From positions 124,001 through 188,000 of the IMG/VR virus record IMGVR_UViG_3300049793_000366: 64,000 nucleotides of DNA; one strand, written 5' to 3'. The notes below the pieces were generated by a model. It saw nothing but the letters and a program-made list of their open reading frames with translations, was not told the origin of the DNA and did no database searches. Both the position numbers and the translations under genes were made by a program. Below, piece after piece: positions 47,085 through 61,846 of this stretch (the first letter of the stretch is position 1; every line of letters starts with the position of its first letter).

Positions 47085-47146
47085 TTAAGTCCGTATTTGC
47101 ACAATACGTTAAAAGTCCGTATATTTACGTCAAATTGTAAATTCAT

Positions 47147-48346
47147 ATGATAATTCAGTCACTTCTCGATTTAGACTATTACAAACTAACAATGGGTCAA
47201 TTAGCTTTCTTAAGCTTCCCTGATGTTGAAATTGAAGCCGCCTTTAAAAACAGAAAATCAAATATTCGATTAGCGGATATTATCCCGGTTGACCGATTGA
47301 TATCCGAACTCAATCATGTTAGAACTCTGGTTCTTAGTAAAGAACAGTTAAAGTTCGTTGAAAAACAGGGCATATTTAAGCCAGAATACCGAGAGTATCT
47401 ATATCAGATAAACCGTAGCAATCCTCTATCCGAAGTACGAGTAGAGGTTGTTGATGGTCAATTTGATGTGAGAACAAAGGGTAAATGGCCTAATGCCATT
47501 TTGTGGGAAACAATAGTATTAGCTGTTATTAACGAGCTATATTATGAGTATAAATACCCAAATCTCTCTTATGATGAGGGTCTTACTAGACTTGCGAATA
47601 AGATTAAAATTCTTAAAAAGCATCCACAAATTAAATTCTCTGACTTCGGTACTCGAAGAAGAGCATCAAGAACATGGCAAGCACTTGTTGTTAATAAATT
47701 AAGACAAGCATTACCTAATCAGTTTCTTGGAACATCGAATGTTCAGTTGGCTATGGATTATAACATAACTCCAATTGGAACATTCGCACATGAAATGCCA
47801 ATGGTTGCTTCTGGTGTTTGGTATGATACTGATGTTGAATTAAAAGCATCACATGGTAGAGTACTTGATATGTGGTATGAGTTATATGATGTTAAATTAT
47901 CAATTGCTCTTACTGATACATTTGGAACCAAATTCTTCTTTGAAGACTTCGTAGACCGCGCACCAGTTTGGAATGGTTTACGACACGATTCTGGTGATCC
48001 ATTTGAATTTGGTCATAAAGTATTAGCTTACTACGCATCACTGGGTATTGATTCTAAAACAAAAACTATTGTGTTTAGTGATGGTTTGGATTTAGATATC
48101 ATCATCCGACTCGAAGCAATATTTGGTAAATTAATTAAATGCGTTTTCGGTTGGGGTACGACTCTGACAAATGACATTGGGTATGAAACATTATCTATTG
48201 TTATGAAAGCCATCCGTGCTAATGGTAATGAATTGGTTAAGCTTTCTGATAACTTAAATAAAGCTACTGGTTCCGATGCTACTAAATCTCGATACATTAG
48301 TGTATTTGGGTATGACAATCAAAAGCGTGAAGAGTGTGTAGTCTAA
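47147..48346 (+). CDS. pncB: Nicotinate phosphoribosyltransferase
   Basis: DLDYYKLTM, DFGTRRR, GTSNV, PIGTFAHE (phospho-His), LTDTFG, LRHDSGDP, IVFSDGL, FGWGT, VKLSDN..KATG. Confidence 0.93.
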   Translation: MIIQSLLDLDYYKLTMGQLAFLSFPDVEIEAAFKNRKSNIRLADIIPVDRLISELNHVRTLVLSKEQLKFVEKQGIFKPEYREYLYQINRSNPLSEVRVEVVDGQFDVRTKGKWPNAILWETIVLAVINELYYEYKYPNLSYDEGLTRLANKIKILKKHPQIKFSDFGTRRRASRTWQALVVNKLRQALPNQFLGTSNVQLAMDYNITPIGTFAHEMPMVASGVWYDTDVELKASHGRVLDMWYELYDVKLSIALTDTFGTKFFFEDFVDRAPVWNGLRHDSGDPFEFGHKVLAYYASLGIDSKTKTIVFSDGLDLDIIIRLEAIFGKLIKCVFGWGTTLTNDIGYETLSIVMKAIRANGNELVKLSDNLNKATGSDATKSRYISVFGYDNQKREECVV

Positions 48347-48372
48347 TAAGTAAAACCTAAAAACAAAAACAC

Positions 48373-48672
48373 ATGGAATATAACGGTCAAACAAAAAAGG
48401 AATACGAGAAAAACTTCACACGTATTCGTGATATTATCACTAAGGCTGATGGTGATAAGGAAAAAGCTCTTCGACTTGCTAAAACACAAGCAGACAGAAT
48501 AGAAGATGAATATAAAGCAATCAATCGTTCAAATGCCGCAGTAAAGCTTGGACATGAGTGGTTAGCTGACCCTTTCTTCGAAAGAGCTTATGAGCTTGGT
48601 GCTGTGGGTAAAATGGAGTACCGCGAATACAAGCTTAAGAAATTATTTGAAATGCAAGAAGAAGGAGCCTAA
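48373..48672 (+). CDS. Hypothetical protein with C-terminal tag
   Basis: EYREYKLKKLF. Confidence 0.6.
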   Translation: MEYNGQTKKEYEKNFTRIRDIITKADGDKEKALRLAKTQADRIEDEYKAINRSNAAVKLGHEWLADPFFERAYELGAVGKMEYREYKLKKLFEMQEEGA

Positions 48673-48875
48673 TGAGACAGCAGATTCTTAAATACTTACC
48701 TATTAAAATTGCAATATTATTCTCTTTTATTACTGTGCCTCTTATCGCAGCAATATTCGTTAATAGTGTTGTAATTTCTTACTTAATTGGTGCTATTTTT
48801 TTCGGTTTGCTACTGTTAGTTTACTATATAGTGAAGGGAAGGAAATCTCACCCAGAATTAAAAAATAAAATTTGA
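48672..48875 (+). CDS. Small 2-TM membrane protein
   Basis: Two hydrophobic helices. Confidence 0.55.
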   Translation: MRQQILKYLPIKIAILFSFITVPLIAAIFVNSVVISYLIGAIFFGLLLLVYYIVKGRKSHPELKNKI

Positions 48876-48876
48876 A

Positions 48877-49134
48877 ATGAAAGAAGTAAGAATTCTATTA
48901 ACGGAAGAAACATTCACACTTTTGTGTAAGCAGGGCTATGTTGCATATAAGAATAATATGTTTAGCGTATCTCAGATAAACATCACAAAAGCCGACTTGG
49001 AGAAGTTGATAAGCGGTGATATCATCGATAAACCACAGGATGGTGTTGACTTTAAAATTGCGTTAATGGATATCGGTTATGATAGGATTTTACCAATAAT
49101 TAAACGTTCACCATTCTATGGTAATTCTATATAA
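48877..49134 (+). CDS. Hypothetical protein
   Basis: ORF in operon. Confidence 0.55.
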   Translation: MKEVRILLTEETFTLLCKQGYVAYKNNMFSVSQINITKADLEKLISGDIIDKPQDGVDFKIALMDIGYDRILPIIKRSPFYGNSI

Positions 49135-49399
49135 AAATTTAGTATTTTGTTCAAGTATATATGGTACTAAACTGACTGGTAGAAAGGATGTGAAATTTTT
49201 AGAAGTACATTATGGTAGCGATAAAGATTTTATTGAAAAGTATCAGAAAATTTACCCAAATCATCGAAAGGGAATATTCTTAGATGCTAGAAAACCTGTA
49301 CCGAGAGATTTCAGACTCGATGTTGAACATATGATTAAGTCAGACCCACTGTTAATTCAAACAATTCGTGATTTAAAGCTTGAAGAGTTATGTCAATAG
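49118..49399 (+). CDS. Hypothetical protein with C-terminal tag
   Basis: Ends TIRDLKLEELCQ. Confidence 0.55.
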   Translation: MVILYKNLVFCSSIYGTKLTGRKDVKFLEVHYGSDKDFIEKYQKIYPNHRKGIFLDARKPVPRDFRLDVEHMIKSDPLLIQTIRDLKLEELCQ

Positions 49400-49770
49400 A
49401 AGAGAAAATATTCATATATGGGTTTATGTTTATTATGCTTGGTGTTCTATACTTCATCGGATTTTTTATACGTGACTATAAACAAAAGTATCTACGTAAT
49501 AAAAGAATGCAGAGGTTGAATTGGAATAAGGTATTGAAAATATTCGCGTGTGTTACTGGATTTTGTTTACTTGGTTCTATCAACAATAAAATGTTTACTT
49601 GGTATGAAGCTCCGATAATGGGATTTACTATCACTGCTGTGATTTTGTTTGCTGGTATATTTAGACCAGAGAATGATACAAATGAGTATAAACAATTCGA
49701 TAATCCTGAGTTTAAGGTATATGAGAAAGCACATCAGAGAGATAGAAAAATTAAAGATATTTTAAAATGA
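49390..49770 (+). CDS. 3-TM membrane protein with C-terminal tag
   Basis: Ends HQRDRKIKDILK. Confidence 0.6.
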   Translation: MSIEEKIFIYGFMFIMLGVLYFIGFFIRDYKQKYLRNKRMQRLNWNKVLKIFACVTGFCLLGSINNKMFTWYEAPIMGFTITAVILFAGIFRPENDTNEYKQFDNPEFKVYEKAHQRDRKIKDILK

Positions 49771-50321
49771 AGGTAGGATTATTCTTTGGGTCATTTAACC
49801 CAATACACTTAGGTCACTTAGAGATTGCTGAGAAATCAGCTAAATATGTAGATGAAGTTTGGTTCATTGTTTCACCTCACAATCCATTTAAGGATCCGAG
49901 TATGTTGATAAACCAAACTTCTCGATTAGAAATGGTTAAGTTAGCCGTTGAGTCTACACCGCATTATAAAGTTAGTGATGTTGAATTTAATTTACCAACA
50001 CCTACGAGAACTCATGTTACTTTAGAAAAATTAATCGAAGAACACGAGCATGAATTTTTATTGATATTTGGTTCTGATTGTGTGAATACATTACACACAT
50101 GGGAAAGAGGTGATTGGATTTTAGAAACATTTCCTATCATCGCATTTAAGAGAGAATCTGAGGATGTAAATCCTGAAATTTATAAAAAGTTAATATCAGA
50201 AACTCATATATCATCTACGATAATACGAAATAATATTATAAATGGTTTGCCGGTTGATAGTCTTCTACCAACTTTAGTTGAGCAATACATATATAATAAT
50301 GGATTATGGTCACACAAGTAA
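49767..50321 (+). CDS. nadD: Nicotinate-nucleotide adenylyltransferase
   Basis: GLFFGSFNPIHLGH, VSPHNPFK, RLEMV, IFGSD, W, ISSTIIR. Confidence 0.92.
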   Translation: MKVGLFFGSFNPIHLGHLEIAEKSAKYVDEVWFIVSPHNPFKDPSMLINQTSRLEMVKLAVESTPHYKVSDVEFNLPTPTRTHVTLEKLIEEHEHEFLLIFGSDCVNTLHTWERGDWILETFPIIAFKRESEDVNPEIYKKLISETHISSTIIRNNIINGLPVDSLLPTLVEQYIYNNGLWSHK

Positions 50322-50575
50322 ATAAAGTACTACACTTTGATAATTCGAGAATAGAACTATCGCAAACTGGTCTTTGTTTTACTGCCTTTTTCTACACGAA
50401 TGATAGCGAGAAACCTTGTTTTCATTTTAAATTTTATTCGGATGGAAAGTCGATAATTGAGGATTTTAAGAAGGAAGCTCGTAACTATATGTCAACCAGT
50501 ATATTGACTGATTTTATCAACAAAAACCCTGATGTATTACGGACAATTAATTTTGATAATTTAATTGTTAATTGA
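50306..50575 (+). CDS. Hypothetical protein with C-terminal tag variant
   Basis: Ends VLRTINFDNLIVN. Confidence 0.5.
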   Translation: MVTQVNKVLHFDNSRIELSQTGLCFTAFFYTNDSEKPCFHFKFYSDGKSIIEDFKKEARNYMSTSILTDFINKNPDVLRTINFDNLIVN

Positions 50576-50629
50576 GAAAAAGTTTGTATATTTGTAATTG
50601 ATTAATGGACACTAAAAACCAAAACATAT

Positions 50630-51247
50630 ATGTTTAAATTAAAACCAAATACTCGTTCATTGTTCTGGAATGTTGACACTCAAGTTGACTTCATGAATTC
50701 AGAAGGTAAGTTATACGTTACTGACGCAGAACAAATCAAAGACACTTTAGCAAAAATAACCAAGTTCGCTAAAGACAACAATGTTCAGGTTGTTAATACT
50801 GCTGATTGGCATTATGCTGATTCTGCTGAGTTATCCGAAACACCTGATTTTATAAATACCTTCCCACCACACTGTATGGCTAATACGCCTGGTGCTGAGT
50901 TGATACCGGAAACAAAACCAGAAAAGTATGATTCTATCATTGATTGGAAAAATCCAAAATGTGATATTAAAACTGACTCTACAAACTTTTTAGTCTTGAA
51001 AGATAAGTTTGATGTCTTCACTGGAAATCAGTTCACTAAAAGATTAATTGATGCTTTAAACCCAGATGTTGTTTACGTCTATGGTGTAGCTACAAATGTC
51101 TGTGTTGACTGTGCTGTTAACGGTTTACTTGATAACGGTTATAAAGTGGTTGTGTTTGAAGATGCTATTAAAGAGCTTCCAAATATACCATCACCAATAC
51201 AAAATTGGATAGACAAAGGAGCAGAAATTATTAAATTCACAAACTAA
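50630..51247 (+). CDS. pncA: Nicotinamidase (isochorismatase family)
   Basis: VDTQVDF, TADWH, FPPHCM..TPGAEL, K, GVATNVCV; promoter TATATTTG 50587-50594. Confidence 0.88.
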   Translation: MFKLKPNTRSLFWNVDTQVDFMNSEGKLYVTDAEQIKDTLAKITKFAKDNNVQVVNTADWHYADSAELSETPDFINTFPPHCMANTPGAELIPETKPEKYDSIIDWKNPKCDIKTDSTNFLVLKDKFDVFTGNQFTKRLIDALNPDVVYVYGVATNVCVDCAVNGLLDNGYKVVVFEDAIKELPNIPSPIQNWIDKGAEIIKFTN

Positions 51248-51259
51248 AATATAAATACT

Positions 51260-52114
51260 ATGAATACGAAAAAAGTATCAAATCACATCACCAATTGGTT
51301 AAAAGATTTTGCATTAAATACTAAACAAAACGGTTACGTTATCGGAGTATCTGGTGGAATTGACTCCGCAGTTGTTTCGACACTATGCGCCCGTACTGGA
51401 TTACCACTTATTGTTGTGAGTATGCCTATTCATCAAGAAGCTAATCAAGTTTCTCGCGCACAAGAGCATATGGATTGGTTGAAAAAAAATTATCCAAATG
51501 TAACACAGTTTGAATTTGACTTAACATCAGTTTATGATTCATTCGTAACTAAGTTAGATGGTAAAACACATTTTATTTCAAAGCCTGAGCATGATACACA
51601 GGTTGCTGATAAAATGTTCTTAACACTTGCGAATACTCGCTCTCGTTTGAGAATGACAACACTTTATTCACTTGCCGGATTAAACAATATGCTTGTTGCT
51701 GGTACTGGTAATAAAGTAGAAGACTTTGGTGTAGGATTCTTCACTAAGTATGGTGATGGTGGAATTGATGTATCACCAATCGGTGAGTTGATGAAATCTG
51801 AGGTATACATATTGGGTGCTGAATTAGGTATAAACCAAGCAATACTTTCAGCAAGACCTACTGATGGTCTTTGGGATGATGGTAGAACAGATGAAGACCA
51901 AATTGGTGCTACTTATGATGAACTTGAGTGGGCTATGGGTGTTCAAGAAGAATTGGGAAATAATCCTGAGACTTTATACGAAATGAACGAAAGACAAACG
52001 ATAGTGTGGAATATTTATTTGTCTCGACACACCGCTAACTCACATAAAATGCAAATGCCACCAGTTTGCTCATTAAAAGGAATTAAATATGATGAAGAAG
52101 TTGTTGCACAGTAA
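51260..52114 (+). CDS. nadE: NH3-dependent NAD+ synthetase
   Basis: IGVSGGIDSA, NTRSRLRM, GTGNKVE, GFFTKYGDGG, PTDGLW, DEDQIGATYDELE, NSHK; no glutaminase domain. Confidence 0.93.
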   Translation: MNTKKVSNHITNWLKDFALNTKQNGYVIGVSGGIDSAVVSTLCARTGLPLIVVSMPIHQEANQVSRAQEHMDWLKKNYPNVTQFEFDLTSVYDSFVTKLDGKTHFISKPEHDTQVADKMFLTLANTRSRLRMTTLYSLAGLNNMLVAGTGNKVEDFGVGFFTKYGDGGIDVSPIGELMKSEVYILGAELGINQAILSARPTDGLWDDGRTDEDQIGATYDELEWAMGVQEELGNNPETLYEMNERQTIVWNIYLSRHTANSHKMQMPPVCSLKGIKYDEEVVAQ

Positions 52115-52460
52115 TCTATCTGGTGTTGAGAACACCAGTGATTTAAATTATGTTTTTTCTTTAATTAGAAAGGCATCAAATTCAATCGAAAGAACTGCTT
52201 TAATAAAAAAAGCATTGAAACTTAATGAAGAGGTTGGTGAATTATCAGCAGAAGTTTTAAGAGAAGATGGTTATAAAGACAGCACTTATACGAAAGAAGA
52301 AATTCGTAGAAGAATAATCGAAGAGGCAGTTGATTCATTAGTTATGATTGGTGATATTCTAAACGATGTTAAAGCAACCGATTCTGAAATAATTGACTGC
52401 ACCGAAGATGCTGTTACGAAATGGTTGACTAAACTCGATGAGAAGAAGAATAAAGTCTGA
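52089..52460 (+). CDS. MazG-like NTP pyrophosphohydrolase
   Basis: KLNEEVGELSAE...IIEEAVD. Confidence 0.75.
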   Translation: MMKKLLHSNLSGVENTSDLNYVFSLIRKASNSIERTALIKKALKLNEEVGELSAEVLREDGYKDSTYTKEEIRRRIIEEAVDSLVMIGDILNDVKATDSEIIDCTEDAVTKWLTKLDEKKNKV

Positions 52461-52686
52461 GTGGCGTAGTGAGACTAAAAATCTCACAGAGATTGGATAT
52501 CTTCAACACACCATCAATACGGTGAATGATATGATAGCAGAGACAGAGGTGTTGGTTGATAGATTGCTCGATAAGGGTGAATTAACTGACGTTGACCGTC
52601 TTATGCTTAGAGAATTGGAAGAATATAAAGTAGGATTAAGAGAGTTAAAAGCTCAAGGAATAAAAAATTTAAAAGAAGCACTATGA
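52438..52686 (+). CDS. Hypothetical protein
   Basis: ORF in operon. Confidence 0.5.
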   Translation: MRRRIKSEWRSETKNLTEIGYLQHTINTVNDMIAETEVLVDRLLDKGELTDVDRLMLRELEEYKVGLRELKAQGIKNLKEAL

Positions 52687-53090
52687 AAAAATTAACAGCT
52701 TATGTTGTATTCGAAAAGGGGTACGAGTACAATGACGAAATTTATCACTTACCTGATGTAAGCGGTGGTGATCCAAAGAGAGTAACATTCTCAAAAGAAG
52801 ATGCTAAGAATCTTATTACTGTGTTGAGCAGAGATTCATTCAGAGGATTGGATATTGGTAATTATACATATGACCTAAAAGATGTAGTTGATGAAATATC
52901 TCTAAAAGAGATATTCAAAATCAATAAGTGGAAATGGGATGAAGATAATTTAACTGTTCCTGAGAAAGCAACCGATGAACAAATCGATGAGGTTATGAAA
53001 TTTATTGATTTACAGTTTTATGACTTTCAGGAAGTTGAAATGGATATTGCATCAATGCGTAATGCAAAAATAGAAATAGTAGAAAGCTAA
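52683..53090 (+). CDS. Hypothetical protein with C-terminal tag variant
   Basis: Ends SMRNAKIEIVES. Confidence 0.55.
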   Translation: MKKLTAYVVFEKGYEYNDEIYHLPDVSGGDPKRVTFSKEDAKNLITVLSRDSFRGLDIGNYTYDLKDVVDEISLKEIFKINKWKWDEDNLTVPEKATDEQIDEVMKFIDLQFYDFQEVEMDIASMRNAKIEIVES

Positions 53091-53626
53091 TGAATTTTAA
53101 AAATAAACCGAACCATTGTATTAGTACTGAGAATGGTCAAGTGTGGGTGTCTCGTTCGGTAGCAGTAGTGGTTACTACCTTACTACGATGTAATGATGAA
53201 TTATATGCGCTTATGATTAAGCGTGGTGAGAGCGTTCATGCTTCGGGTAAATGGTGTATGCCTTGTGGTTACTTAGATTGGGATGAAACCGCGTCTGAGT
53301 GTGCTGTTAGAGAGATTTGGGAAGAATCTGGATTAGATGTTCTGGGTCTATCTAAATCTGAAATTGAACATAATGGTTTACATAATGTGTGGGATTTAAA
53401 TACTAATCCTGACTTAAATGATAGTCAAGATGTAGCTCTTCATTATTCAATAATAATATCTTCTGATAACTTTCCTAAGCTTAGTGATGAAAATGCCGAA
53501 GAGAATGAGGTAGTTGGCCTTGCGTGGGTTAAACTTTCTGAACTTGGTGAATATAACTTAGCATTCCGTCACGACGAAAGAATAAAAAAGTTTTTGGATT
53601 ACTATGAGAAGATTAAAGTTAAATAA
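53090..53626 (+). CDS. Nudix hydrolase (candidate ADP-ribose pyrophosphatase)
   Basis: GKWCMPCGYLDWDETASECAVREIWEESGL Nudix box; LAFRH C-terminal motif. Confidence 0.85.
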   Translation: MNFKNKPNHCISTENGQVWVSRSVAVVVTTLLRCNDELYALMIKRGESVHASGKWCMPCGYLDWDETASECAVREIWEESGLDVLGLSKSEIEHNGLHNVWDLNTNPDLNDSQDVALHYSIIISSDNFPKLSDENAEENEVVGLAWVKLSELGEYNLAFRHDERIKKFLDYYEKIKVK

Positions 53627-53780
53627 TGAGAATGCAAGAGTAGGCGGTGTATGCGCTGGTCTTGGTGAATACTTCAATATTGATCCTGTTTGGTTTAGAT
53701 TGCTTTTTGTAATTGGTTTTTTTACACCAATGATTCCTGCCGTGTTGACTTATATAATAATATTGATAGTTTTAGATTAA
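53604..53780 (+). CDS. pspC: PspC-domain membrane protein, 58 aa (not in ORF track)
   Basis: MRRLKLNNENARVGGVCAGLGEYFNIDPVWFRLLFV...LTYIIILIVLD*. Confidence 0.85.
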   Translation: MRRLKLNNENARVGGVCAGLGEYFNIDPVWFRLLFVIGFFTPMIPAVLTYIIILIVLD

Positions 53781-53781
53781 C

Positions 53782-54219
53782 ATGGAAATTTTAAATAGAA
53801 GAGCATATTACGATTATAGCATCATAGAACATTATGAAGCGGGTATTATGTTGACTGGTTCGGAGATAAAGTCAATACGAGGTGGTGAAGCAAACTTAAA
53901 TGAAGCATATGTATTCATCAATAACGGCGAGGTATTCGTTAAGAATATGTACATTTCTAAATTTGAACAATCTTCATATTTGAACCATGAAGAAAAGCGT
54001 GATAGAAAATTATTACTTTCTAAAACTCAAATTTTAAAAATTGAAAAATATCTACAAACAAAAGGTACTGTGATTATACCGATAAAAGTATTTTTCAGCA
54101 AACGCTGGGCAAAACTAAAAATCGGAGTTGGTCGTGGTAAGAAAACCTACGATAAGAGAGAATCGATAAAAGAAAGAGAATCAAAAAGAGAATTGTCTCG
54201 ACTGAACTCGAAAGTATAG
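53782..54219 (+). CDS. smpB: SsrA-binding protein SmpB
   Basis: NRRAYYDY, EAGIMLTGSEIKSIR, RDRKLLL, GRGKKTYDKRESIK. Confidence 0.93.
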   Translation: MEILNRRAYYDYSIIEHYEAGIMLTGSEIKSIRGGEANLNEAYVFINNGEVFVKNMYISKFEQSSYLNHEEKRDRKLLLSKTQILKIEKYLQTKGTVIIPIKVFFSKRWAKLKIGVGRGKKTYDKRESIKERESKRELSRLNSKV

Positions 54220-54330
54220 TAAATATTTAGTTTTTTATATGTGAAACCGATGTCTAAAGCATCGGTTTTTTCTTTATTGGATAAAATAAATAATATATAC
54301 TCCATATATAAAAACAAGACCCATAGCACT

Positions 54331-55056
54331 ATGCCGAATTTAGAAGAGATACTTAATATGATCCAAAATCATGGAATTTTTACCACAATTTTATTTTTAG
54401 TTGGTATTGGATTTTGGGGTTTAATGAAAACAGCTTGGTTTAGTGATTTGGTTTCTAAATTTGGAGATGCACTTATTGGAAAACTTTTTAAGAAAAAAAA
54501 GCACAATGATTTAGTTGCGATTACTGAAGTGGAAATAATTAACCACGATATATTTAACTATATTGACTTGTGGCAATTCTCTATAATTCCAACTCTTAAC
54601 TTTTCAACTGACTACAGAACCGTAGTATTTAGAAAGTATCTTAAAATATACTTACAGAAGCATAAAGAAAACTTAAGCAAGTTCATTACTGATGCTAAGT
54701 ATAAAGATATGCCCGAATCTGAGCTTTGGAAGAGCTTTCTTCAATTGATTAATGATATTATTCATGATTATGAGAAAGAGATGTCACACCAAGGAATTCC
54801 AGATGTAATCATCGAGAAGATGAAAGTTAAGAATAATGATACATTATCTCTTACTATTGATTTGATTGAGGGTATTTGTAACTCACAATTCTATGGTTCT
54901 GAGAATAACTTACTAAAAGTCTATTCTATATTGAATATTATGTTATCTATACTTGAGAATACTGTCTCTGGTTCAGCCAATGTTTGTAACTCTATTAATG
55001 GTCAATTAGCAGGGTTGGAGATGGATGGACGAAAAGAACCGGATTCAAATCACTAA
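54331..55056 (+). CDS. Membrane-anchored hypothetical protein
   Basis: ATG 54331 (MPNLEE) after AATATATA motif; N-terminal TM. Confidence 0.55.
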   Translation: MPNLEEILNMIQNHGIFTTILFLVGIGFWGLMKTAWFSDLVSKFGDALIGKLFKKKKHNDLVAITEVEIINHDIFNYIDLWQFSIIPTLNFSTDYRTVVFRKYLKIYLQKHKENLSKFITDAKYKDMPESELWKSFLQLINDIIHDYEKEMSHQGIPDVIIEKMKVKNNDTLSLTIDLIEGICNSQFYGSENNLLKVYSILNIMLSILENTVSGSANVCNSINGQLAGLEMDGRKEPDSNH

Positions 55057-55100
55057 GACAGGGTGCTATTTAATATATAAAAAATAAACAACAAACAGCT

Positions 55101-55439
55101 ATGATTAAAGAAAACATTAATAAAATCGACCACGAACTAAAAGGTTTATTCGAAAACGTTACGATTGAAGAAAAATCTGATAGAAATAGATTCTATTTTG
55201 AAATTAAGGTTTCTGGTTGTAAGCTGGATGAATCCCTGAGTGCTTGTGAAGTATCATTTCAAATCGATAAAGGTGATTTGACTGGTAAAGAAATTAAGTG
55301 GAATTATTGGGCTAACCCTAAAACACAAGAATATCAAGTACCTCGCTTATCTCACGTTGACTATATCACAAAGGATATATCAGATGTTGTAATGAAGGGT
55401 AGATTAGATGCTGACTATTTGAGCGGCTTAAAAAAATAA
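55101..55439 (+). CDS. Hypothetical protein, late-motif gene
   Basis: AATATATA 55072-55079. Confidence 0.6.
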   Translation: MIKENINKIDHELKGLFENVTIEEKSDRNRFYFEIKVSGCKLDESLSACEVSFQIDKGDLTGKEIKWNYWANPKTQEYQVPRLSHVDYITKDISDVVMKGRLDADYLSGLKK

Positions 55440-55448
55440 CTATAAATA

Positions 55449-57167
55449 GTGAATCTTAGTGAAATTACATATAGTAAAGTTAGAGCGGAAATAGAAACGT
55501 ACTTAAAAGACACCTATAATAAGGCTGGTGTTTTATTTTCACCTGCTTCGCCGTATGGTCAAATATTGAATGTGATGGAGAGTTTATATCAATATTCATT
55601 CCTTTACTTAAAGAACTCTATTAATCAATTCGACCTTAGCTTACCAAACTCTAATAATAAAAAGATTATTAGAAATGCTGCTATTTTCGCAGGACACATA
55701 CCTGGTCGCTCTATATCTGCTACTGGAACACTTAGATTTCACTTAAAGTCTGATATTGATATTGAAAAAGAAATACCTGGAAATAGAATAACATTATTTG
55801 ATAAGACAGCTATTAAGAATAAACAAAATGGTTTAGAATATATCATTAATCTTGGTGCTGAGAAAATATCATATAAAGTATCACCGGGATTTCAATTCTT
55901 CGCGAGTCTTACACAAGGTAAGTGGGACACCCAGATTTTAACTGGTAGTGGTCAACAAAATCAAACATTCCAGATTAATAATCCTGGTGGTCAAAAGGAG
56001 ATTGAGAATTTCAATATCACTGTGACTGTAAATGGTGACTTATGGGTGGTTAAAAAGCATCTATATGATATGTTACCAGATGAGAACGCTTGTGTTGTTA
56101 GAACAGGGTTTAATGGTGGTATAGACGTTATATTTGGTAATGGTGGCTTCGGTGCTATTCCAACTTTAGGAGCTGAAATAAAAGTGTCGTATATTATAAC
56201 TGATGGTTCGAGAGGATCTATTTTCAGAAGAACATTAAATGATTGGAAGATATTGGATAATGTTATGGATGGATTTGGAAACACTATCGACTTAGCTAAG
56301 ATATTTGACATCTATATACACACTGACATTAACTTTGGTGCTGATTCAGAGTCAATTCAATTTACAAAAAATGTATTACCAATCGTAAGTAATAACTTCG
56401 TACTTGGTTTACCTCAGCAATATGCTTATGAAATTAAGAAGCTGGGAGTATTCTCACATATAAATGCATATGAAAAAGATGGTGTAATACACGTTGTTGC
56501 TACACCGAATATTAAAGTATTTAAAAATCAGAATGCTAATTACTTTACAGTTGATAAGAGAGCATTTGAATTAGATACTTATGAGAAGATTAAGATTGAT
56601 AAGTATCTTAGAACTGCTGGTAATATACAATTAACAAGAAAGTATAAGATAGTAGCACCAGTTTTATCATATTATATTATGAACGTATTTGTTATAACAT
56701 ATTCTGATTCAATTGATGATAATGTTAATAATCAAATCTATGATAAGGTATCTGAATACTTCTTAAATTTAAGTCGTTTGAATAGAATACCAAAACTTGA
56801 TTTAATAAAAGAGTTATCATCGATTGATGATATACACTCTGTTGATATTCAATTTGTATCGAAGAAGAATGAAGATTATCACAAGTCTAATAAGATAAAT
56901 GATGCCAATAGACGTAATCAATTCGCTGCTAAAGGCGCATTGCGTTTAAGCAGACCTTTCATTGGATATGATAAGAGTAAAGTTCTTGGTATAGATCCAG
57001 TCATGGGTGATATTATGTATGATAGTGAAGAGCTACCAATTATCAGAGGTGGTTGGTATGATAGAAACAATATTTATTACTCAGATAACGTAACATCAAG
57101 TGGATTCAGCTCAGTTAATATTATTAAAAAGGGAGTGGTTGATGCTAAACAAAGACCTAAATTCTAA
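55449..57167 (+). CDS. Baseplate wedge subunit (T4 gp6/baseplate J-like)
   Basis: ITYSKVRAEIETYLK, NAAIFAGHIPGRSISATG, VIFGNGGFGAIP..GAEIKVSY..TDG..G, GADSES. Confidence 0.72.
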   Translation: MNLSEITYSKVRAEIETYLKDTYNKAGVLFSPASPYGQILNVMESLYQYSFLYLKNSINQFDLSLPNSNNKKIIRNAAIFAGHIPGRSISATGTLRFHLKSDIDIEKEIPGNRITLFDKTAIKNKQNGLEYIINLGAEKISYKVSPGFQFFASLTQGKWDTQILTGSGQQNQTFQINNPGGQKEIENFNITVTVNGDLWVVKKHLYDMLPDENACVVRTGFNGGIDVIFGNGGFGAIPTLGAEIKVSYIITDGSRGSIFRRTLNDWKILDNVMDGFGNTIDLAKIFDIYIHTDINFGADSESIQFTKNVLPIVSNNFVLGLPQQYAYEIKKLGVFSHINAYEKDGVIHVVATPNIKVFKNQNANYFTVDKRAFELDTYEKIKIDKYLRTAGNIQLTRKYKIVAPVLSYYIMNVFVITYSDSIDDNVNNQIYDKVSEYFLNLSRLNRIPKLDLIKELSSIDDIHSVDIQFVSKKNEDYHKSNKINDANRRNQFAAKGALRLSRPFIGYDKSKVLGIDPVMGDIMYDSEELPIIRGGWYDRNNIYYSDNVTSSGFSSVNIIKKGVVDAKQRPKF

Positions 57168-57169
57168 AT

Positions 57170-57424
57170 ATGCTATACGAAGATAAAGACATACCAGAGC
57201 TTCATTATATGAAGCACAGACATGATAACGTTAAGGGTACGCATAATTGGTGGGACACTATTTTAAGAAAGAACATCTCATCTTATATGTATAACAATAG
57301 TTTGATGGAGAAATATTTGGATAAATTGCAAAAACCTTTGACATTATTCTTCGACCAACACAATATTATAAAGAATTTTAAGAATTATATAGTAGATAAG
57401 TATCATTATAAGCATCCCGACTAA
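57170..57424 (+). CDS. Hypothetical protein, baseplate-associated candidate
   Basis: Directly follows the wedge gene. Confidence 0.5.
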   Translation: MLYEDKDIPELHYMKHRHDNVKGTHNWWDTILRKNISSYMYNNSLMEKYLDKLQKPLTLFFDQHNIIKNFKNYIVDKYHYKHPD

Positions 57425-57502
57425 ACATAAGTCGAAAAAGTAATAAAATAGAGGTATACATTTTAATATATAATTAATAATAAAAAATAAGATAAATCGA
57501 AG

Positions 57503-58189
57503 ATGCTTAGAAAACCAAGCGAGGGAAATAGAAAAATTGATGGGTTTAAGAAATTTACCGAGTTGAAAGGCGGTAAAGCTAAATCTTCTAAAGAGGCTGA
57601 TGAATTTGAAGCTGAAATGGAAGAGCAACCTCTTGATGGTAGTGAGCTTCCTGGTAATCCAAACTTACCAGAAGAAACTTCATACACTCAAGGTAAGAAA
57701 CCTTCTACTAAGAGTCCTAAGAGTATGTCTACTAAGCCAATCCAACCTGAGGAATTCGAAGGTGAAGATGATGACGATGATGACGATGAAGAGTTAAACG
57801 AAGATACCAAAGTTAGAATGATTGGTAAAGTTGCTAAATTCCCTAAAAAGGTAAAAGCATCTAAAGCGTATAACTTCCTTGAGAACGTAAAGATTTCTAA
57901 AAATTCTATTTGGTACATTATGGTTGAGAAACAAGATAATGAACTTCAAATGGTTAAGTATAATTATAAAAAAGGTGTTGATTTAGTTAAGTTTGTTAAC
58001 GAATTAAAGGGCTTTTATATTAGTAAATATGGTAAAATGAATAAAGATTTACCTAAGATACTTGAGAAAATAGAAGTTGATGGTACAGATAAGTATTCAA
58101 CAATTAAAAATATCCCTTTAATCGAGTTGGGTGGTCGAAAGCTTATCGGCATCATCACTGAAGACTTAATTAAGTTATTAAGTAAATAA
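57503..58189 (+). CDS. Acidic low-complexity protein, probable head-internal/scaffold protein
   Basis: FKKFTE, poly-D tract, ELNED; AATATATA 57465-57472. Confidence 0.55.
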   Translation: MLRKPSEGNRKIDGFKKFTELKGGKAKSSKEADEFEAEMEEQPLDGSELPGNPNLPEETSYTQGKKPSTKSPKSMSTKPIQPEEFEGEDDDDDDDEELNEDTKVRMIGKVAKFPKKVKASKAYNFLENVKISKNSIWYIMVEKQDNELQMVKYNYKKGVDLVKFVNELKGFYISKYGKMNKDLPKILEKIEVDGTDKYSTIKNIPLIELGGRKLIGIITEDLIKLLSK

Positions 58190-58193
58190 TTTT

Positions 58194-58218
58194 AAAACCC
58201 TCTATTGAGGGTTTTTTT
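58194..58218 (+). terminator. Intrinsic terminator
   Basis: AAAACCCTC-tatt-GAGGGTTTTTTT. Confidence 0.75.
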
Positions 58219-58239
58219 ATGAAATAAAAGTAACAGAAA

Positions 58240-58503
58240 ATGCAAGAAGTATTAGAGAAAGTAGCAGAAGAAATTAAAAGACCTAAGAGTAGGAGAAGAA
58301 AAAAGGTAGTAAGGCTCATCACACCGGAGTTGATATCTGATATTGAGTCTGAGATAATAAAGATTGATTATTACTTAACTGGTAAATGCATACAGTTGCG
58401 TGGTAAGGGTTATCGTCCAAACGATGCTGATGAAGACCAACCAAAAAGACTCAGGTTAGAATATTTAAGGGAGTTGAGGTTGAGGCTAATGCAATTGTCG
58501 TAA
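58240..58503 (+). CDS. Hypothetical basic protein
   Basis: ORF. Confidence 0.5.
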   Translation: MQEVLEKVAEEIKRPKSRRRKKVVRLITPELISDIESEIIKIDYYLTGKCIQLRGKGYRPNDADEDQPKRLRLEYLRELRLRLMQLS

Positions 58504-58857
58504 TTTATAATCACGTATATTGTCTAATCCAACTATCAATTCATTACCACTATACGTGACACCGTTTGATAGTACAAATGTTGCGTTATCATTATTTGAA
58601 TCTTCATTTAGTGTAAGCTTTGAGTGGCTTATTCGATGGTCAAGTAAACCCTTATCATTATAGAACATTTCAACGGATACCTTGTTGTTACAATTTATAT
58701 TGGTTGCTGACGGGTCAATCATACTTTGTGCAATTTTATCAAAACCATCTGGTAGAGTTAATTCAATTGACATCATGAGGCGTTTGTTTTCTATCGTGAA
58801 TACTTCGCCAGTTTCTTTAACTAAAGCCTGTTCTTTATTTTCCATCGATATAAACAA
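58486..58857 (-). CDS. Hypothetical protein with C-terminal tag
   Basis: Ends NIRDYKLRQLH. Confidence 0.55.
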   Translation of the reverse strand: MFISMENKEQALVKETGEVFTIENKRLMMSIELTLPDGFDKIAQSMIDPSATNINCNNKVSVEMFYNDKGLLDHRISHSKLTLNEDSNNDNATFVLSNGVTYSGNELIVGLDNIRDYKLRQLH

Positions 58858-59059
58858 TTTCTGGGTTATCTTGTGGTTTCCATCTACGTAGTGATACTAT
58901 CTTGTCTGGTTCGTTAAATACACGAGCATCTGAGACTTTATCTGTCCAAATTGGACCATCTGATTTTAGCCCAGCAAAATACATAGCATCTTTATTCATA
59001 ATCCAAAAGTCTCGTTTTGGTTCTGATACTATATTAACTTTTAATTTATACTTAGACAC
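58835..59059 (-). CDS. Hypothetical protein
   Basis: ORF in operon. Confidence 0.5.
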   Translation of the reverse strand: MSKYKLKVNIVSEPKRDFWIMNKDAMYFAGLKSDGPIWTDKVSDARVFNEPDKIVSLRRWKPQDNPEIVYIDGK

Positions 59060-60037
59060 TTATTCAGCGAATGAAAGGTTAAGCTGTTCGATTGATTGTT
59101 TCTCTTCAAGACTAATAATAGCCCTTGCTATCATTTTGTCGCATGATATAACGTGTAACTTGTCGGATTGTTTATTAACAGCTATTGTGTCTGATATAAT
59201 CAATTCAGTTAATACAGAAGAGTTAAGATTCTCGATAGCATTTCCGGATAGAATACCATGTGTAGCAATAGCACGTACTGACCTAGCACCATTTTCCATT
59301 ACCAACTCACTTGCTTTCTTTAAAGTACCTAATGTATCAGCCATATCATCTATGATAACAACATTGCGGTCTTTTACATCAGCACCCATTAATTCCATTG
59401 AATGAATTTCATTTGGTTTAACTCGGCGTTTATTTATCTGAGCGAAGTGTGCTTCTGGGAAATATTTAGCAAAGTCTAATGCTCTTTTTACACCACCTTG
59501 GTCTGGTGACATTATTGTTAGATTTTCAAGAGCAAGTGACTTGATGTAGTTTGTGAAAATTTTACCACCATTTAAGTGAATAACTGGTATGTTGAAGAAT
59601 CCTTGAATTGCAGATGCGTGTAAATCAATTGTGATGATTCGTGTTGCTCCACCTCTTTCATAGGCATCAGCCATAACCCTTGCTCCAATTGATGAACGAA
59701 GGTGGTCTACCTTATCTTGACGTGAGTAACCATAATATGGTGTCACGAGTGTTATTTCTTTAGCACCAGCTCTTTTAGCAGCATCTAATATCAACATAGT
59801 TTCCACGATAGAATCAGAAGAACTTGTTGTTTGTATAATATAGATATCTTTACCACGCACAGACTCATTGAAAGTTGGGAATATCTCACCATCTTTGAAT
59901 TTCTCAATCTTTAAATCACCAAGACCCGTACTTTGTGGTGTCAGTAGACTTGTAGCTTGTTGCGACAATACGATTTTATTAATACTATCAGCGAGTGATT
60001 CGCTTGATGTTCCAGAAAAAATAGTGAATGTGTTCAT
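59060..60037 (-). CDS. prs: Ribose-phosphate pyrophosphokinase (PRPP synthetase)
   Basis: KFKDGE, ESVRG, PYYGYSRQDK, IDLHASAIQGFF, SPDQGG, KRR, VIIDDMADTLGT, ATHGILSG; likely start MNTFTIFSG (60037). Confidence 0.93.
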   Translation of the reverse strand: MNTFTIFSGTSSESLADSINKIVLSQQATSLLTPQSTGLGDLKIEKFKDGEIFPTFNESVRGKDIYIIQTTSSSDSIVETMLILDAAKRAGAKEITLVTPYYGYSRQDKVDHLRSSIGARVMADAYERGGATRIITIDLHASAIQGFFNIPVIHLNGGKIFTNYIKSLALENLTIMSPDQGGVKRALDFAKYFPEAHFAQINKRRVKPNEIHSMELMGADVKDRNVVIIDDMADTLGTLKKASELVMENGARSVRAIATHGILSGNAIENLNSSVLTELIISDTIAVNKQSDKLHVISCDKMIARAIISLEEKQSIEQLNLSFAE

Positions 60038-60047
60038 AATAGTGGTA

Positions 60048-61626: not shown

Positions 61627-61846
61627 CTAATATTTCTGATAATCTTCTATCTCTATCTTCAAGTCTCTCTTCTATTATCCGTAACCTATCCGCTGCATTT
61701 CTATCCATAATTTCATACCAAGTGCCTGATTTATAGCTCATTACACGCTCTGATTTTATATCAAAGTAACAATCACCGTCCACTGGATTCGTGGGTTGTG
61801 ATTGGTGGAATGTAACATCCACGAGTGTATAATCACTAATAGACAT
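61613..61846 (-). CDS. Hypothetical protein with C-terminal tag
   Basis: Ends EDRDRRLSEILEKDA. Confidence 0.55.
   Translation of the reverse strand: MSISDYTLVDVTFHQSQPTNPVDGDCYFDIKSERVMSYKSGTWYEIMDRNAADRLRIIEERLEDRDRRLSEILEKDA

What the first reader, a model, noticed from the sequence alone, without database searches (positions are those of the whole stretch)
47147..60037. Complete phage-encoded deamidating NAD+ rebuilding pathway (pncA-pncB-nadD-nadE + Nudix + prs): candidate third NAD-reconstitution (anti-NADase) system
Seen: four Preiss-Handler salvage enzymes with intact catalytic motifs within about 5 kb (pncB 47147, nadD 49767, pncA 50630, nadE 51260), a Nudix hydrolase (53090) in the pncA/nadE operon, and prs (59060), with host-type early promoters. 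Known: SIR2/TIR/SEFIR defences cleave NAD+ to nicotinamide and ADP-ribose; the described phage countermeasures are NARP1 (Adps+Namat) and NARP2 (NAMPT+NMNAT), both amidated routes. Inference: this set could recycle both cleavage products. Nam goes to NA (PncA, releasing NH3 that the NH3-dependent NadE can reuse); ADPR goes to AMP+R5P (Nudix) and then PRPP (Prs); NA+PRPP goes to NaMN, NaAD and NAD+. That would be a six-enzyme route through deamidated intermediates, unlike NARP1/2.
Basis: partly seen in the sequence, partly recalled or inferred. Interest (0 to 1): 0.9.

Follow-up and report, generated by a model that had tools for sequence, protein, structure and literature searches.

The report
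Megaphage NAD+ salvage gene cluster
A giant phage (a 0.5-0.7 Mb contig) carries a complete, conserved set of bacterial-type enzymes for rebuilding NAD+ from nicotinamide. Such clusters in jumbo phages, and the idea that they offset NAD+-depleting defences, are already published and still untested.

Summary
PncB, NadD, PncA and NadE lie within 4,968 bp. A Nudix hydrolase sits in the same tightly packed plus-strand unit. A genuine Prs lies 5.4 kb further on, on the opposite strand. All have intact catalytic motifs, are syntenic in two sister megaphage contigs, and are under purifying selection.

The contig is viral: an IMG/VR genome of 508 kb, also seen as a 712 kb contig, related to the 634-642 kb phages.

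"Third NARP" is outdated, because NARP3 is PnuC+NadR. Preiss-Handler clusters in "NAD-jumbo phages", with a proposed counter-defence role, were described in 2024. The Nam/ADPR recycling loop is textbook bacterial NAD recycling; NrtR regulons have the same gene content.

Prs is not Adps and PncB is not Namat or NAMPT. The Nudix most resembles the ADPR-specific NadM/NrtR Nudix domains, but its specificity is unproven, and relatives of it elsewhere are not next to NAD genes. The promoter claim is unsupported.

One new supporting clue: both sister phages carry a Poa1p/Adpp-like Macro phosphatase directly after pncB.

Verdict: a new member of a known kind. A deamidated anti-NADase route remains an untested, worthwhile hypothesis.

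The parts
47147..48346 (+). pncB, an ATP-coupled nicotinate phosphoribosyltransferase (NA + PRPP -> NaMN)
   Evidence: NF003704 417 bits (cut-off 379) and TIGR01514 332 bits (cut-off 270). NAPRTase_N plus NAPRTase domains. Only 54 bits to the phage NAMPT/Namat-type phrog_448. His215 lies in GTFAHE.
48373..49770 (+). Five small ORFs between pncB and nadD. They include orf99 (48373-48672, strongly conserved) and two small membrane proteins (48672-48875 and 49390-49770). Function unknown; probably not pathway enzymes.
   Evidence: No Pfam or PHROG hits. orf99 is 82-98% identical in the sister phages, but its homologues elsewhere are not tied to NAD genes.
49767..50321 (+). nadD, nicotinate-mononucleotide adenylyltransferase (NaMN + ATP -> NaAD)
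   Evidence: TIGR00482 132 bits (cut-off 112). HLGH at 14-17 and ISSTIIR at 148-154.
50586..50593 (+). TATATTTG, a possible Bacteroidota-type -7 promoter element 43 nt upstream of pncA
   Evidence: Weak evidence: 10 of 91 TAnnTTTG hits are intergenic, against about 3.9 expected.
50630..51247 (+). pncA, nicotinamidase (Nam -> NA + NH3)
   Evidence: The ten best PDB matches are nicotinamidases or close structural relatives of them (1ILW, 3PL1, 2H0R and others). The catalytic residues D16/K124/C158 and metal ligands D59/H61/H81 are invariant in six phage homologues. The NCBIfam equivalog score is below cut-off (48 against 174).
51260..52114 (+). nadE, a single-domain (NH3-dependent type) NAD synthetase (NaAD + NH3 + ATP -> NAD+)
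   Evidence: TIGR00552 161 bits (cut-off 64), with no glutaminase domain. PP-loop SGGIDS at 31-36. The best PDB match is Francisella NadE 3FIU. phrog_11189 'NAD synthetase' scores 251 bits.
52089..53090 (+). Three small overlapping ORFs (123, 82 and 135 aa) between nadE and the Nudix. Function unknown.
   Evidence: No Pfam, PHROG or PDB hits. The 123-aa and 135-aa ORFs are conserved in the sister phages.
53090..53626 (+). Nudix hydrolase, predicted ADP-ribose pyrophosphatase (ADPR -> AMP + ribose-5-P). The specificity is inferred.
   Evidence: Intact Nudix box at 60-82. AF2 model with pLDDT 94. Best TM-score to the NrtR Nudix domain bound to ADPR (3GZ8, rmsd 2.1 A); NadM-Nudix is also among the top hits. 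The top PDB hits of the family profile are NadM-Nudix ADPRase and NrtR. Its start overlaps the preceding ORF.
53604..54219 (+). A PspC-like 58-aa ORF and SmpB, the last genes of the same tightly packed unit. They are not part of the pathway.
   Evidence: SmpB Pfam E = 6e-53. PspC is annotated on the sister-phage homologues.
54243..54269 (+). Terminator-like hairpin followed by a T run, the likely end of the pncA-nadE-Nudix-SmpB unit
   Evidence: The best-scoring terminator-like site in 46-61 kb: 11 pairs.
59060..60037 (-). prs, class I ribose-phosphate diphosphokinase (ribose-5-P + ATP -> PRPP + AMP). It lies in a separate leftward unit.
   Evidence: NF002320 328 bits (cut-off 297). It aligns with B. 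subtilis Prs through to the C-terminus. 85.5% identical in the sister phage. 63% and 59% identical in the 642 and 634 kb phages.

Best explanation
The window is part of a megaphage genome that carries a captured copy of the bacterial 'salvage I plus recycling' branch of NAD metabolism.

Shown at sequence level: four enzymes give a complete route.
- PncA deamidates nicotinamide to nicotinate.
- PncB joins nicotinate to PRPP, giving NaMN.
- NadD adenylates NaMN to NaAD.
- The single-domain, ammonia-type NadE amidates NaAD to NAD+.

Inferred:
- The co-transcribed Nudix is an ADP-ribose pyrophosphatase that yields ribose-5-phosphate.
- The nearby phage Prs turns ribose-5-phosphate into the PRPP that PncB needs.
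- Both products of NAD+ cleavage can therefore be recycled.

Inferred function: the module keeps the NAD+ pool of the infected cell up during a long megaphage infection. This covers the phage's own demand. By analogy with NARP2, it should also blunt NAD+-depleting (SIR2/TIR/SEFIR-type) defences.

It is a further example of the published 'NAD-jumbo phage' Preiss-Handler clusters, not a new biochemical pathway.
For: - Enzyme identities and intact motifs.
- Tight packing: overlapping or 12-bp-spaced genes run from pncA to SmpB, followed by a terminator-like hairpin.
- Synteny and purifying selection in two sister contigs.
- The same four enzymes cluster in other viral contigs of 42-264 kb (L045, L002/L050, L023/L058, L064). 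PncB-NadE pairs occur in about 20 of 30 other PncB-bearing IMG/VR contigs. The 735 kb phage LR756501 has PncA-like, NadE, PncB and Prs within 27 kb.
- Nudix: its structural and profile neighbours are the ADPR-binding NrtR and NadM-Nudix domains. These families sit in bacterial pncA-pncB-nadD-nadE and prs-nadV operons.
- Sister phages add a Macro gene directly after pncB whose best solved relative is the ADPR-1''-phosphate phosphatase Poa1p. That is the same relationship reported for Adpp of the anti-aRES pathway NARP1-AP.
- Viral nature: an IMG/VR genome; large ORFs that match only the 634-642 kb phages; baseplate-wedge and virion-protein PHROG hits; the nearest cellular PncB is only 42-47% identical.
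- Literature: Li et al. 2024 describe such clusters and propose the same role.
Against: - No activity, expression or infection data exist for any of these genes.
- The Nudix fold is generic (17-22% identity to the ADPR-specific structures). Relatives of this Nudix at ~40% identity on other phage contigs have no NAD genes nearby.
- prs is on the other strand, behind SmpB and a structural gene. In the related 642 kb phage, nadE, Nudix and prs are hundreds of kb apart, so prs may simply serve nucleotide synthesis.
- The route costs about four ATP per NAD+ and needs PRPP. It is therefore a poorer emergency response than NARP1.
- The Macro gene is absent from this window.
- The host is unknown, so whether it has NADase defences or lacks salvage genes cannot be said.
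Confidence: 0.6

Rival explanations
1. This is a plain auxiliary metabolic module. The four enzymes top up NAD+ for the phage's own NAD+-consuming enzymes and a long replication cycle, or they complement a host that lacks Nam/NA salvage. They have no selected role against NADase defences. Nudix and prs are unrelated housekeeping genes: nucleotide sanitation or RNA decapping for the Nudix, and PRPP for nucleotide synthesis for prs.
For: - The window is rich in other cofactor, nucleotide and translation genes (CoaE, guanylate kinase, NT5C, aaRS, RNase P protein, PTH2, SmpB). This fits general metabolic autonomy in megaphages.
- Relatives of the Nudix are not linked to NAD genes; one lies 3 kb from an NAD-dependent ligase.
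- prs is in another transcription unit.
Against: - PncA makes nicotinamide the entry point, and nicotinamide arises inside the cell mainly from NAD+ cleavage.
- The sister phages insert a Poa1p/Adpp-like ADPR-1''-P phosphatase into the cluster. This is hard to explain by simple supply.
- The KVP40-type salvage genes, long regarded as an auxiliary pathway, proved to be the counter-defence NARP2.
- The two roles are not mutually exclusive.
Confidence: 0.33
2. The same genes work in a different order. NadE acts as an NMN synthetase (NaMN -> NMN), as in Francisella, and the adenylyltransferase then converts NMN to NAD+.
For: - The best solved relative of the phage NadE is Francisella NadE 3FIU, at 131 bits against 92 for the next match. 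The Francisella NadE homologue is reported to be an NMN synthetase with marginal NAD synthetase activity (PMC3376133).
- The best profile match of the Nudix is the Francisella NadM-Nudix domain.
Against: - The adenylyltransferase is of the NadD family (TIGR00482 above cut-off). In Francisella the switch goes together with replacement of NadD by NadM.
- About 40% identity does not fix substrate preference. Archaeal single-domain NadE, tested directly, is a NaAD enzyme.
Confidence: 0.12
3. The contig is a fragment of a small cellular genome (a CPR or DPANN-like symbiont) rather than a phage, so the cluster is ordinary host metabolism.
For: - The closest cellular PncBs are from CPR bacteria.
- The window holds translation-related genes.
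- The sister contig sits in an NCBI metagenome assembly.
Against: - IMG/VR lists the contig as a viral genome.
- Its giant ORFs match only the 634-642 kb phages.
- It has baseplate-wedge, head-decoration and virion-protein PHROG hits.
- Most ORFs are orphans, and there are no tRNA or rRNA genes in 64 kb.
- No cellular genome in the species set has a PncB above 47% identity.
Confidence: 0.03

Closest known systems
'NAD-jumbo phage' Preiss-Handler clusters (Li et al., Microbiome 2024, PMC11662467)
   Same: Jumbo and megaphages encode pncB, nadD and nadE as a physical cluster (for example Kuafu_71). pncA is listed among the phage genes. The ten largest gut phages (536-716 kb) all carry complete NAD pathways. 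A counter-defence role against Sir2-type NAD+ depletion is proposed.
   Different: That paper does not mention Nudix or PRPP at all (0 occurrences of each) and has no experiments. Whether this exact genome is in their set could not be checked, because the supplements are not held. Here the cluster also has PncA next to NadE, a co-transcribed ADPRase-like Nudix, and Prs 5 kb away.
Bacterial NAD salvage I and recycling operons of the NrtR regulon (Rodionov et al. 2008, PMC2330246)
   Same: The gene content matches: nrtR-pncA-pncB-nadD-nadE (Clostridium), pncB-nadD-nrtR-nadE (cyanobacteria), pncA-pncB-nadE (Pseudomonas) and prs-nadV-nrtR (Shewanella, Acinetobacter). The ADPR -> Rib-P -> PRPP recycling logic is stated there. 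The phage Nudix is most similar to the NrtR and NadM Nudix domains.
   Different: The phage protein is Nudix-only: 178 aa, no winged-helix DNA-binding domain, and an intact catalytic box. It is therefore an enzyme, not a repressor. The genes sit in a virus.
NARP2 (NAMPT + NMNAT, Vibrio phage KVP40 type)
   Same: Both use canonical salvage enzymes, start from nicotinamide and PRPP, and would build NAD+ whether or not it has been depleted. KVP40 NatV also carries a Nudix module.
   Different: NARP2 is an amidated two-enzyme route through NMN. Here there are four enzymes working through deamidated intermediates. PncB is not NAMPT, and the adenylyltransferase is of the NadD family.
NARP1 and NARP1-AP (Adps + Namat, with or without the Macro phosphatase Adpp)
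   Same: The aim of re-using ADPR and nicotinamide is shared. The sister phages carry a Poa1p-like Macro phosphatase inside the cluster, as NARP1-AP operons do.
   Different: No ADPR-pyrophosphate chemistry is involved. Prs keeps the C-terminal module that Adps lacks and scores as cellular Prs. PncB is not Namat. ADPR would be broken down to ribose-5-P rather than used whole.
NARP3 (PnuC + NadR, phage Bas30)
   Same: It is a phage pathway that restores NAD+ with ordinary salvage enzymes.
   Different: It imports nicotinamide riboside from outside the cell. No PnuC or NadR was found among the window ORFs scanned.

Membership tests
Preiss-Handler pathway in a jumbo phage ('NAD-jumbo phage') | pncB, nadD and nadE are all encoded by one phage genome larger than 200 kb | tested here: met
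   All three score above the NCBIfam cut-offs. The contig is 507,910 bp in IMG/VR, and the same protein is on a 711,805 bp contig.
Preiss-Handler pathway in a jumbo phage ('NAD-jumbo phage') | The contig is viral | tested here: met
   It is an IMG/VR viral genome. Its giant ORF matches only huge phages. It has baseplate-wedge and virion PHROG hits. The capsid and terminase genes lie outside the window and were not seen.
Nicotinamidase (PncA) | Asp-Lys-Cys catalytic triad plus an Asp/His/His metal site in an isochorismatase fold | tested here: met
   D16, K124 and C158, with D59, H61 and H81, align with P. horikoshii and M. tuberculosis PncA and are invariant in six phage homologues. The NCBIfam equivalog score is below cut-off (48 against 174).
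NH3-dependent NAD synthetase (NadE) | A single synthetase domain with a PP-loop and no glutaminase domain | tested here: met
   284 aa, matching NAD_synthase only. SGGIDS at 31-36.
NH3-dependent NAD synthetase (NadE) | Substrate is NaAD rather than NaMN | not testable with these tools
   The best solved relative is the Francisella enzyme, reported to be an NMN synthetase.
ADP-ribose pyrophosphatase (NadM-Nudix / NuhA type) | Intact Nudix box GX5EX7REUXEEXGU | tested here: met
   Residues 60-82. The box residues are invariant in 61 homologues.
ADP-ribose pyrophosphatase (NadM-Nudix / NuhA type) | Specific recognition and hydrolysis of ADPR | tested here: inconclusive
   The top profile hits are NadM-Nudix and NrtR (6e-12 and 8e-12). 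The best TM-score is to NrtR bound to ADPR. However, identity is 17-22%, other Nudix classes score nearly as well, and homologues elsewhere lack an NAD context.
NrtR transcriptional regulator | C-terminal winged-helix DNA-binding domain fused to the Nudix domain | tested here: not met
   The protein is 178 aa and the model shows a Nudix fold only.
NARP1 | Adps: a PRPS-like enzyme that lacks the C-terminal alpha11-alpha12 module | tested here: not met
   It aligns with B. subtilis Prs up to residue 315 of 317 and passes the Prs NCBIfam cut-off. It scores only 147 bits to the phage phrog_619.
NARP1 | Namat (a nicotinamide ADPR transferase of the NAMPT-like family) | tested here: not met
   The phosphoribosyltransferase is PncB: NF003704 and TIGR01514 are above cut-off and it has the NAPRTase_N domain. 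It scores 54 bits to phrog_448.
NARP2 | NAMPT plus an NMN adenylyltransferase of the NadM/NatV type | tested here: not met
   There is no NAMPT. The adenylyltransferase is NadD; the NadM and NadR models score far below cut-off.
NARP3 | PnuC transporter plus a bifunctional NadR-like enzyme | tested here: not met
   No PnuC or NadR family was found among the window ORFs scanned with Pfam. The rest of the genome was not seen.
NARP1-AP-like extension (Adpp) | A Poa1p-like Macro-domain phosphatase inside the NAD operon | tested here: not met
   It is absent from the window: the gap at 48347-48372 is only 26 bp. It is present in the sister phages (L004:5481-5939 and L003:5836-6294).

The most novel reading that the evidence does not exclude
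The PncA-PncB-NadD-NadE set would be a fourth, deamidated NAD+ reconstitution route. It would work together with the ADPRase-like Nudix and Prs and, in the sister phages, with a Poa1p/Adpp-like Macro phosphatase. It would rebuild NAD+ from nicotinamide and from ADPR or ADPR-1''-phosphate via ribose-5-P and PRPP. It would therefore protect megaphages against both canonical (SIR2/TIR/SEFIR) and RES-type NADase defences.
Probability: 0.3. Interest if true: 0.65.

Novelty: new member of a known kind. Interest (0 to 1): 0.4.

Why it matters
NAD+ depletion is one of the commonest bacterial anti-phage strategies. Three phage reconstitution pathways have been proven so far, and all run through amidated intermediates or whole ADPR.

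If the deamidated Preiss-Handler route also rescues phages, two things follow. The many pncA, pncB and nadE genes already catalogued in jumbo phages would be reclassified from 'auxiliary metabolism' to counter-defence. The route would also be insensitive to how the ADPR moiety is modified, because it needs only nicotinamide and PRPP.

The Adpp-like Macro gene wedged behind pncB in the sister phages is a concrete, cheap-to-test clue in that direction.

As it stands, the finding mainly confirms published genomics for one more megaphage.

Tried and rejected
- Megablast of the cluster against 50,697 phage records: no match. Protein-level searches were needed instead.
- Sigma-70 promoter scan: no enrichment.
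- The AGTCCGTAT repeat upstream of pncB is not a window-wide motif.
- TAnnTTTG is only mildly enriched in intergenic DNA.
- Riboswitches and other RNA families: none at gathering score in the whole window, and only chance-level hits in 46.5-54.5 kb.
- tRNA and tmRNA: none.
- Guilt by association for the Nudix: three contigs with ~40%-identical homologues showed no NAD synthesis genes nearby.
- Could orf99 (48373-48672) be an accessory factor of the pathway? Its homologues sit in a conserved megaphage backbone with or without NAD genes, so this was rejected.
- My guess that the 123-aa ORF (52089-52460) is MazG-like: no Pfam, PHROG or PDB support.
- Adps identity for prs: rejected.
- NAMPT or Namat identity for pncB: rejected.
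- Supplementary tables of Li et al. are not held, so I could not check whether this genome is one of theirs.
- The class I aminoacyl-tRNA synthetase domain reported for the window could not be assigned to an ORF.
- The scan of species-representative genomes did not return the sister contig's assembly, so it gave no host hint.

Full report
**1. What is there**

The region from 41.8 to 58.5 kb is one long run of plus-strand genes with almost no intergenic DNA. Family models identify the following within it:
- PncB, 47147-48346: NF003704 417 bits against a cut-off of 379.
- NadD, 49767-50321: TIGR00482 132 against 112.
- An isochorismatase-fold protein, 50630-51247.
- A single-domain NadE, 51260-52114: TIGR00552 161 against 64.
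- A Nudix protein, 53090-53626.

On the minus strand there is a Prs at 59060-60073: NF002320 328 against 297.

The isochorismatase-fold protein is a nicotinamidase. Its best solved relatives are all nicotinamidases. The Asp16/Lys124/Cys158 triad and the Asp59/His61/His81 metal site are invariant in six phage homologues.

The other motifs are intact as well:
- PncB: phospho-histidine motif GTFAHE and the PRPP motifs.
- NadD: HLGH and ISSTIIR.
- NadE: PP-loop SGGIDS.
- Nudix: box at 60-82.
- Prs: DLHA, NKRR and DDMADTLGT.

**2. Is it more than chance, and is it a phage?**

The window is part of IMGVR_UViG_3300049793_000366 (507,910 bp). The same proteins are also recorded on a 711,805 bp contig.

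Two sister contigs repeat the whole arrangement gene for gene at 60-90% amino-acid identity. One is 709,085 bp, in an NCBI metagenome assembly. The other is a 14.8 kb fragment. The six enzymes have dN/dS of 0.03-0.15 (synonymous sites are near saturation, so the values are rough).

Evidence that the contig is viral:
- The 1,457-aa ORF at 9975-14348 matches only the 642 and 634 kb uncultured phages.
- Prs is 63% and 59% identical to theirs.
- A 572-aa protein between the Nudix and prs matches a baseplate-wedge PHROG, and a 626-aa protein matches head-decoration and virion PHROGs.
- Most ORFs have no family at all.
- There is no tRNA, rRNA or other Rfam family.
- No species-representative cellular genome has a PncB above 47% identity.

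A cellular origin is therefore very unlikely.

**3. Transcription units**

From pncA onward the genes overlap or are 1-12 bp apart: pncA, nadE, three small ORFs, Nudix, a PspC-like ORF, then SmpB. The strongest terminator-like hairpin of the region follows SmpB, at 54243-54269. The claim that the Nudix is in the pncA/nadE operon is therefore reasonable.

A TATATTTG element lies 43 nt upstream of pncA. It fits the Bacteroidota -7 consensus, but the motif is only about 2.6-fold enriched in intergenic DNA. Sigma-70-type sites are at the shuffled expectation (73 against 72.3). 'Host-type early promoters' is thus not supported, and nothing can be said about timing.

prs belongs to a leftward unit with two unknown genes, an RNA ligase and a MazG-like pyrophosphohydrolase. 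It is near the NAD genes but not co-transcribed with them.

**4. PncB versus NAMPT/Namat, and Prs versus Adps**

- PncB passes two nicotinate-specific NCBIfam cut-offs and has the NAPRTase N-terminal domain. It scores only 54 bits against the phage 'nicotinamide phosphoribosyltransferase' PHROG.
- Adps is reported to lack the C-terminal alpha11-alpha12 module of PRPS as a family signature (PMC13586617).
- The window protein aligns with B. subtilis Prs to residue 315 of 317. It scores 328 bits on the cellular Prs model against 147 on the phage PRPS-like PHROG.

The enzymes are therefore not NARP1 components. There is no NAMPT, NadM, PnuC or NadR in the window, so it is not NARP2 or NARP3 either.

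**5. The Nudix**

A 61-sequence alignment gave a confident model (pLDDT 94).

Evidence for an ADPR-handling enzyme:
- The best TM-score is to the Shewanella NrtR Nudix domain bound to ADP-ribose (TM 0.67/0.76, rmsd 2.1 A). RenU and the Francisella NadM-Nudix ADP-ribose pyrophosphatase are also in the top seven.
- A profile of the family puts NadM-Nudix (6e-12) and NrtR (8e-12) first among all solved proteins. The NrtR alignment runs the full length and includes a shared C-terminal AF-x-H motif.
- These are the Nudix lineages tied to NAD metabolism. Members with an intact box, such as NuhA, are active ADPR pyrophosphatases (PMC2330246).
- The phage protein has the intact box and no DNA-binding domain.

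Evidence against certainty:
- Identities to the ADPR-specific structures are 17-22%.
- Many other Nudix classes score only slightly worse.
- Three contigs carrying ~40%-identical homologues show no NAD biosynthesis genes nearby.

I rate ADPR pyrophosphatase as the single most likely activity, at about one half. It is not established.

**6. How it most likely works**

Shown at sequence level: Nam -> NA (PncA) -> NaMN (PncB, using PRPP and ATP) -> NaAD (NadD) -> NAD+ (NadE, using NH3 and ATP).

Inferred: ADPR -> AMP + ribose-5-P (Nudix) -> PRPP (Prs).

This is not new chemistry. [quoted passage not shown] Operons such as nrtR-pncA-pncB-nadD-nadE and prs-nadV-nrtR are common there (PMC2330246).

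Re-use of PncA's ammonia by NadE is speculative. The only related observation is that pncA is immediately followed by nadE in several divergent viral contigs (L056/L063, L058, L064 and the window's clade).

An alternative order of steps, NaMN -> NMN -> NAD+, cannot be excluded. The closest solved NadE is the Francisella enzyme, reported to be an NMN synthetase. The presence of NadD rather than NadM argues for the canonical order.

**7. How common it is in phages**

Anchoring on PncB found 30 other IMG/VR contigs. About 20 have NadE within 10 kb, 7 have PncA, and some have NadD.

Anchoring on PncA found 28 other contigs. Seventeen have PncB and 12 have NadE. All four enzymes occur in L045, L050 (= L002), L058 (= L023) and L064, which are contigs of 42-264 kb. 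A further contig, L080, carries pncB-nadE-pncA side by side.

The 735 kb phage LR756501 has PncA-like, NadE, PncB and Prs within 27 kb.

Among the loci examined, Prs within 10 kb of the cluster was seen only in the window's own clade. A Nudix of this family within 10 kb was found in that clade and, at much weaker scores, in a few other contigs: L010, L012, L025, L030, L034 and L062.

**8. What is already known**

- Li et al. (Microbiome 2024, PMC11662467) assembled 668 gut jumbo phages. They reported 174 'NAD-jumbo phages' with complete salvage or Preiss-Handler pathways.
- They showed a pncB-nadD-nadE cluster and noted that their ten largest phages (536-716 kb, from the rumen and other guts) all belong to this group.
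[quoted passage not shown] They do not mention Nudix or PRPP.
- NARP3, published in 2026, is PnuC+NadR, so the 'third' label is taken.
- I found no paper in the library that tests a phage PncA or Preiss-Handler route against an NADase defence.

**9. A new clue**

In both sister phages a 152-aa gene starts at the stop codon of pncB. It is a Macro-domain protein:
- Pfam Macro at 27.6 bits (cut-off 22), plus a weak ThsA_Macro hit.
- phrog_335 'phosphatase' at 136 bits.
- Its best solved relative is yeast Poa1p, the ADP-ribose 1''-phosphate phosphatase.

A Poa1p-like Macro phosphatase (Adpp) is exactly what extends NARP1 to NARP1-AP. It converts the ADPR-1''-phosphate made by RES-type NADases back to ADPR (bioRxiv 10.64898/2026.01.28.702374). 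Its presence inside a Preiss-Handler cluster argues that, at least in this clade, the cluster deals with NAD+ breakdown products and not only with nutrient niacin.

The window itself lacks the gene: only 26 bp separate pncB from the next ORF. This evidence is therefore indirect for the window.

**10. Verdict**

The pathway is complete and viral, and it is distinct from NARP1, NARP2 and NARP3. However, it is a new member of an already described class of jumbo-phage NAD clusters. Its logic is textbook bacterial recycling, and its counter-defence role is an existing, untested hypothesis.

The closed six-enzyme loop depends on an unproven Nudix specificity and on a prs gene that is merely nearby. 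Interest is moderate (0.4). The experiments listed under the decisive next steps are simple and would settle the question.

Noticed in passing
L004:5481-5939 and L003:5836-6294 (sister phages); absent at window 48347-48372: A 152-aa Macro-domain gene starts at the stop codon of pncB in both sister phages. Its best solved relative is yeast Poa1p (ADPR-1''-phosphate phosphatase), as for Adpp of NARP1-AP. The window has lost it or never had it.
   Followed up: partly
window 53782-54219 (+): A phage-encoded SmpB (Pfam E = 6e-53) is the last gene of the pncA-nadE-Nudix unit. No tmRNA gene was found anywhere in the 64 kb window.
   Followed up: partly
window 51260-52114 (+): The closest solved relative of NadE is Francisella NadE 3FIU (131 bits against 92 for the next), an enzyme reported to be an NMN synthetase. 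The closest phage relatives are NadE of T4-like cyanophages and a pelagiphage (45-48% identity).
   Followed up: partly
L056, L058, L063, L064 and window 50630-52114: pncA is immediately followed by nadE in several divergent viral contigs (PncA 34-37% identical to the window's). An ammonia producer and an ammonia consumer are kept adjacent, with no evidence of channelling.
   Followed up: partly
L069 = LR756501.1:415000-455000: The 735 kb phage has PncA-like, NadE, PncB and Prs homologues within 27 kb. Li et al. 2024 credited it only with nadD. It may therefore have a complete Preiss-Handler route after all.
   Followed up: partly
window 48373-48672 (+): A 99-aa ORF of unknown function is extremely conserved (98% and 82% identity in the sister phages, dN/dS 0.02-0.07, and 54-87% in many other contigs, including one of 591 kb). 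It belongs to a conserved megaphage backbone near DUF7487/DUF2201 genes, with or without NAD genes beside it.
   Followed up: yes
window 60905-61549 (-) and 61836-62495 (-): An RNA ligase (PF09414) and a MazG-like PRA-PH pyrophosphohydrolase share the leftward unit with prs, which suggests an RNA-repair or nucleotide theme. No Tpt1/KptA was seen.
   Followed up: no
window 55449-57167 (+): A 572-aa protein with a weak baseplate-wedge PHROG match (E = 2e-10) is among the most conserved genes of the region (90.7% identity to the sister phage). It sits between the NAD genes and prs.
   Followed up: no
window 21413-21979, 23111-23737, 25527-26165, 27392-27880 (all +): Further cofactor and nucleotide genes are present: guanylate kinase, dephospho-CoA kinase (CoaE), a RelA/SpoT-type HD_4 domain protein and an AAA_33 kinase. 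Elsewhere in 1-46 kb there are Pfam hits to a class I (Met-type) aminoacyl-tRNA synthetase, RNase P protein, PTH2, NT5C, S1 and SPFH. I did not assign these to ORFs.
   Followed up: partly
window 47088-47096 and 47114-47122 (+): The 9-mer AGTCCGTAT occurs twice, 26 bp apart, just upstream of pncB and nowhere else exactly in the window. It could be a local operator or promoter element, or chance.
   Followed up: partly
window 48672-48875 and 49390-49770 (+): Two small predicted membrane proteins (67 and 126 aa) lie inside the cluster, and the second overlaps the nadD start. They match no known niacin transporter family. The 67-aa ORF is absent from the sister phages.
   Followed up: no
window 9975-14348 (-), 34609-38571 (-), 38575-41775 (-): Three giant ORFs of 1,457, 1,320 and 1,066 aa. 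The first matches only the 634-642 kb phages at about 30% identity, and the third matches an uncharacterised PHROG. Functions unknown.
   Followed up: no
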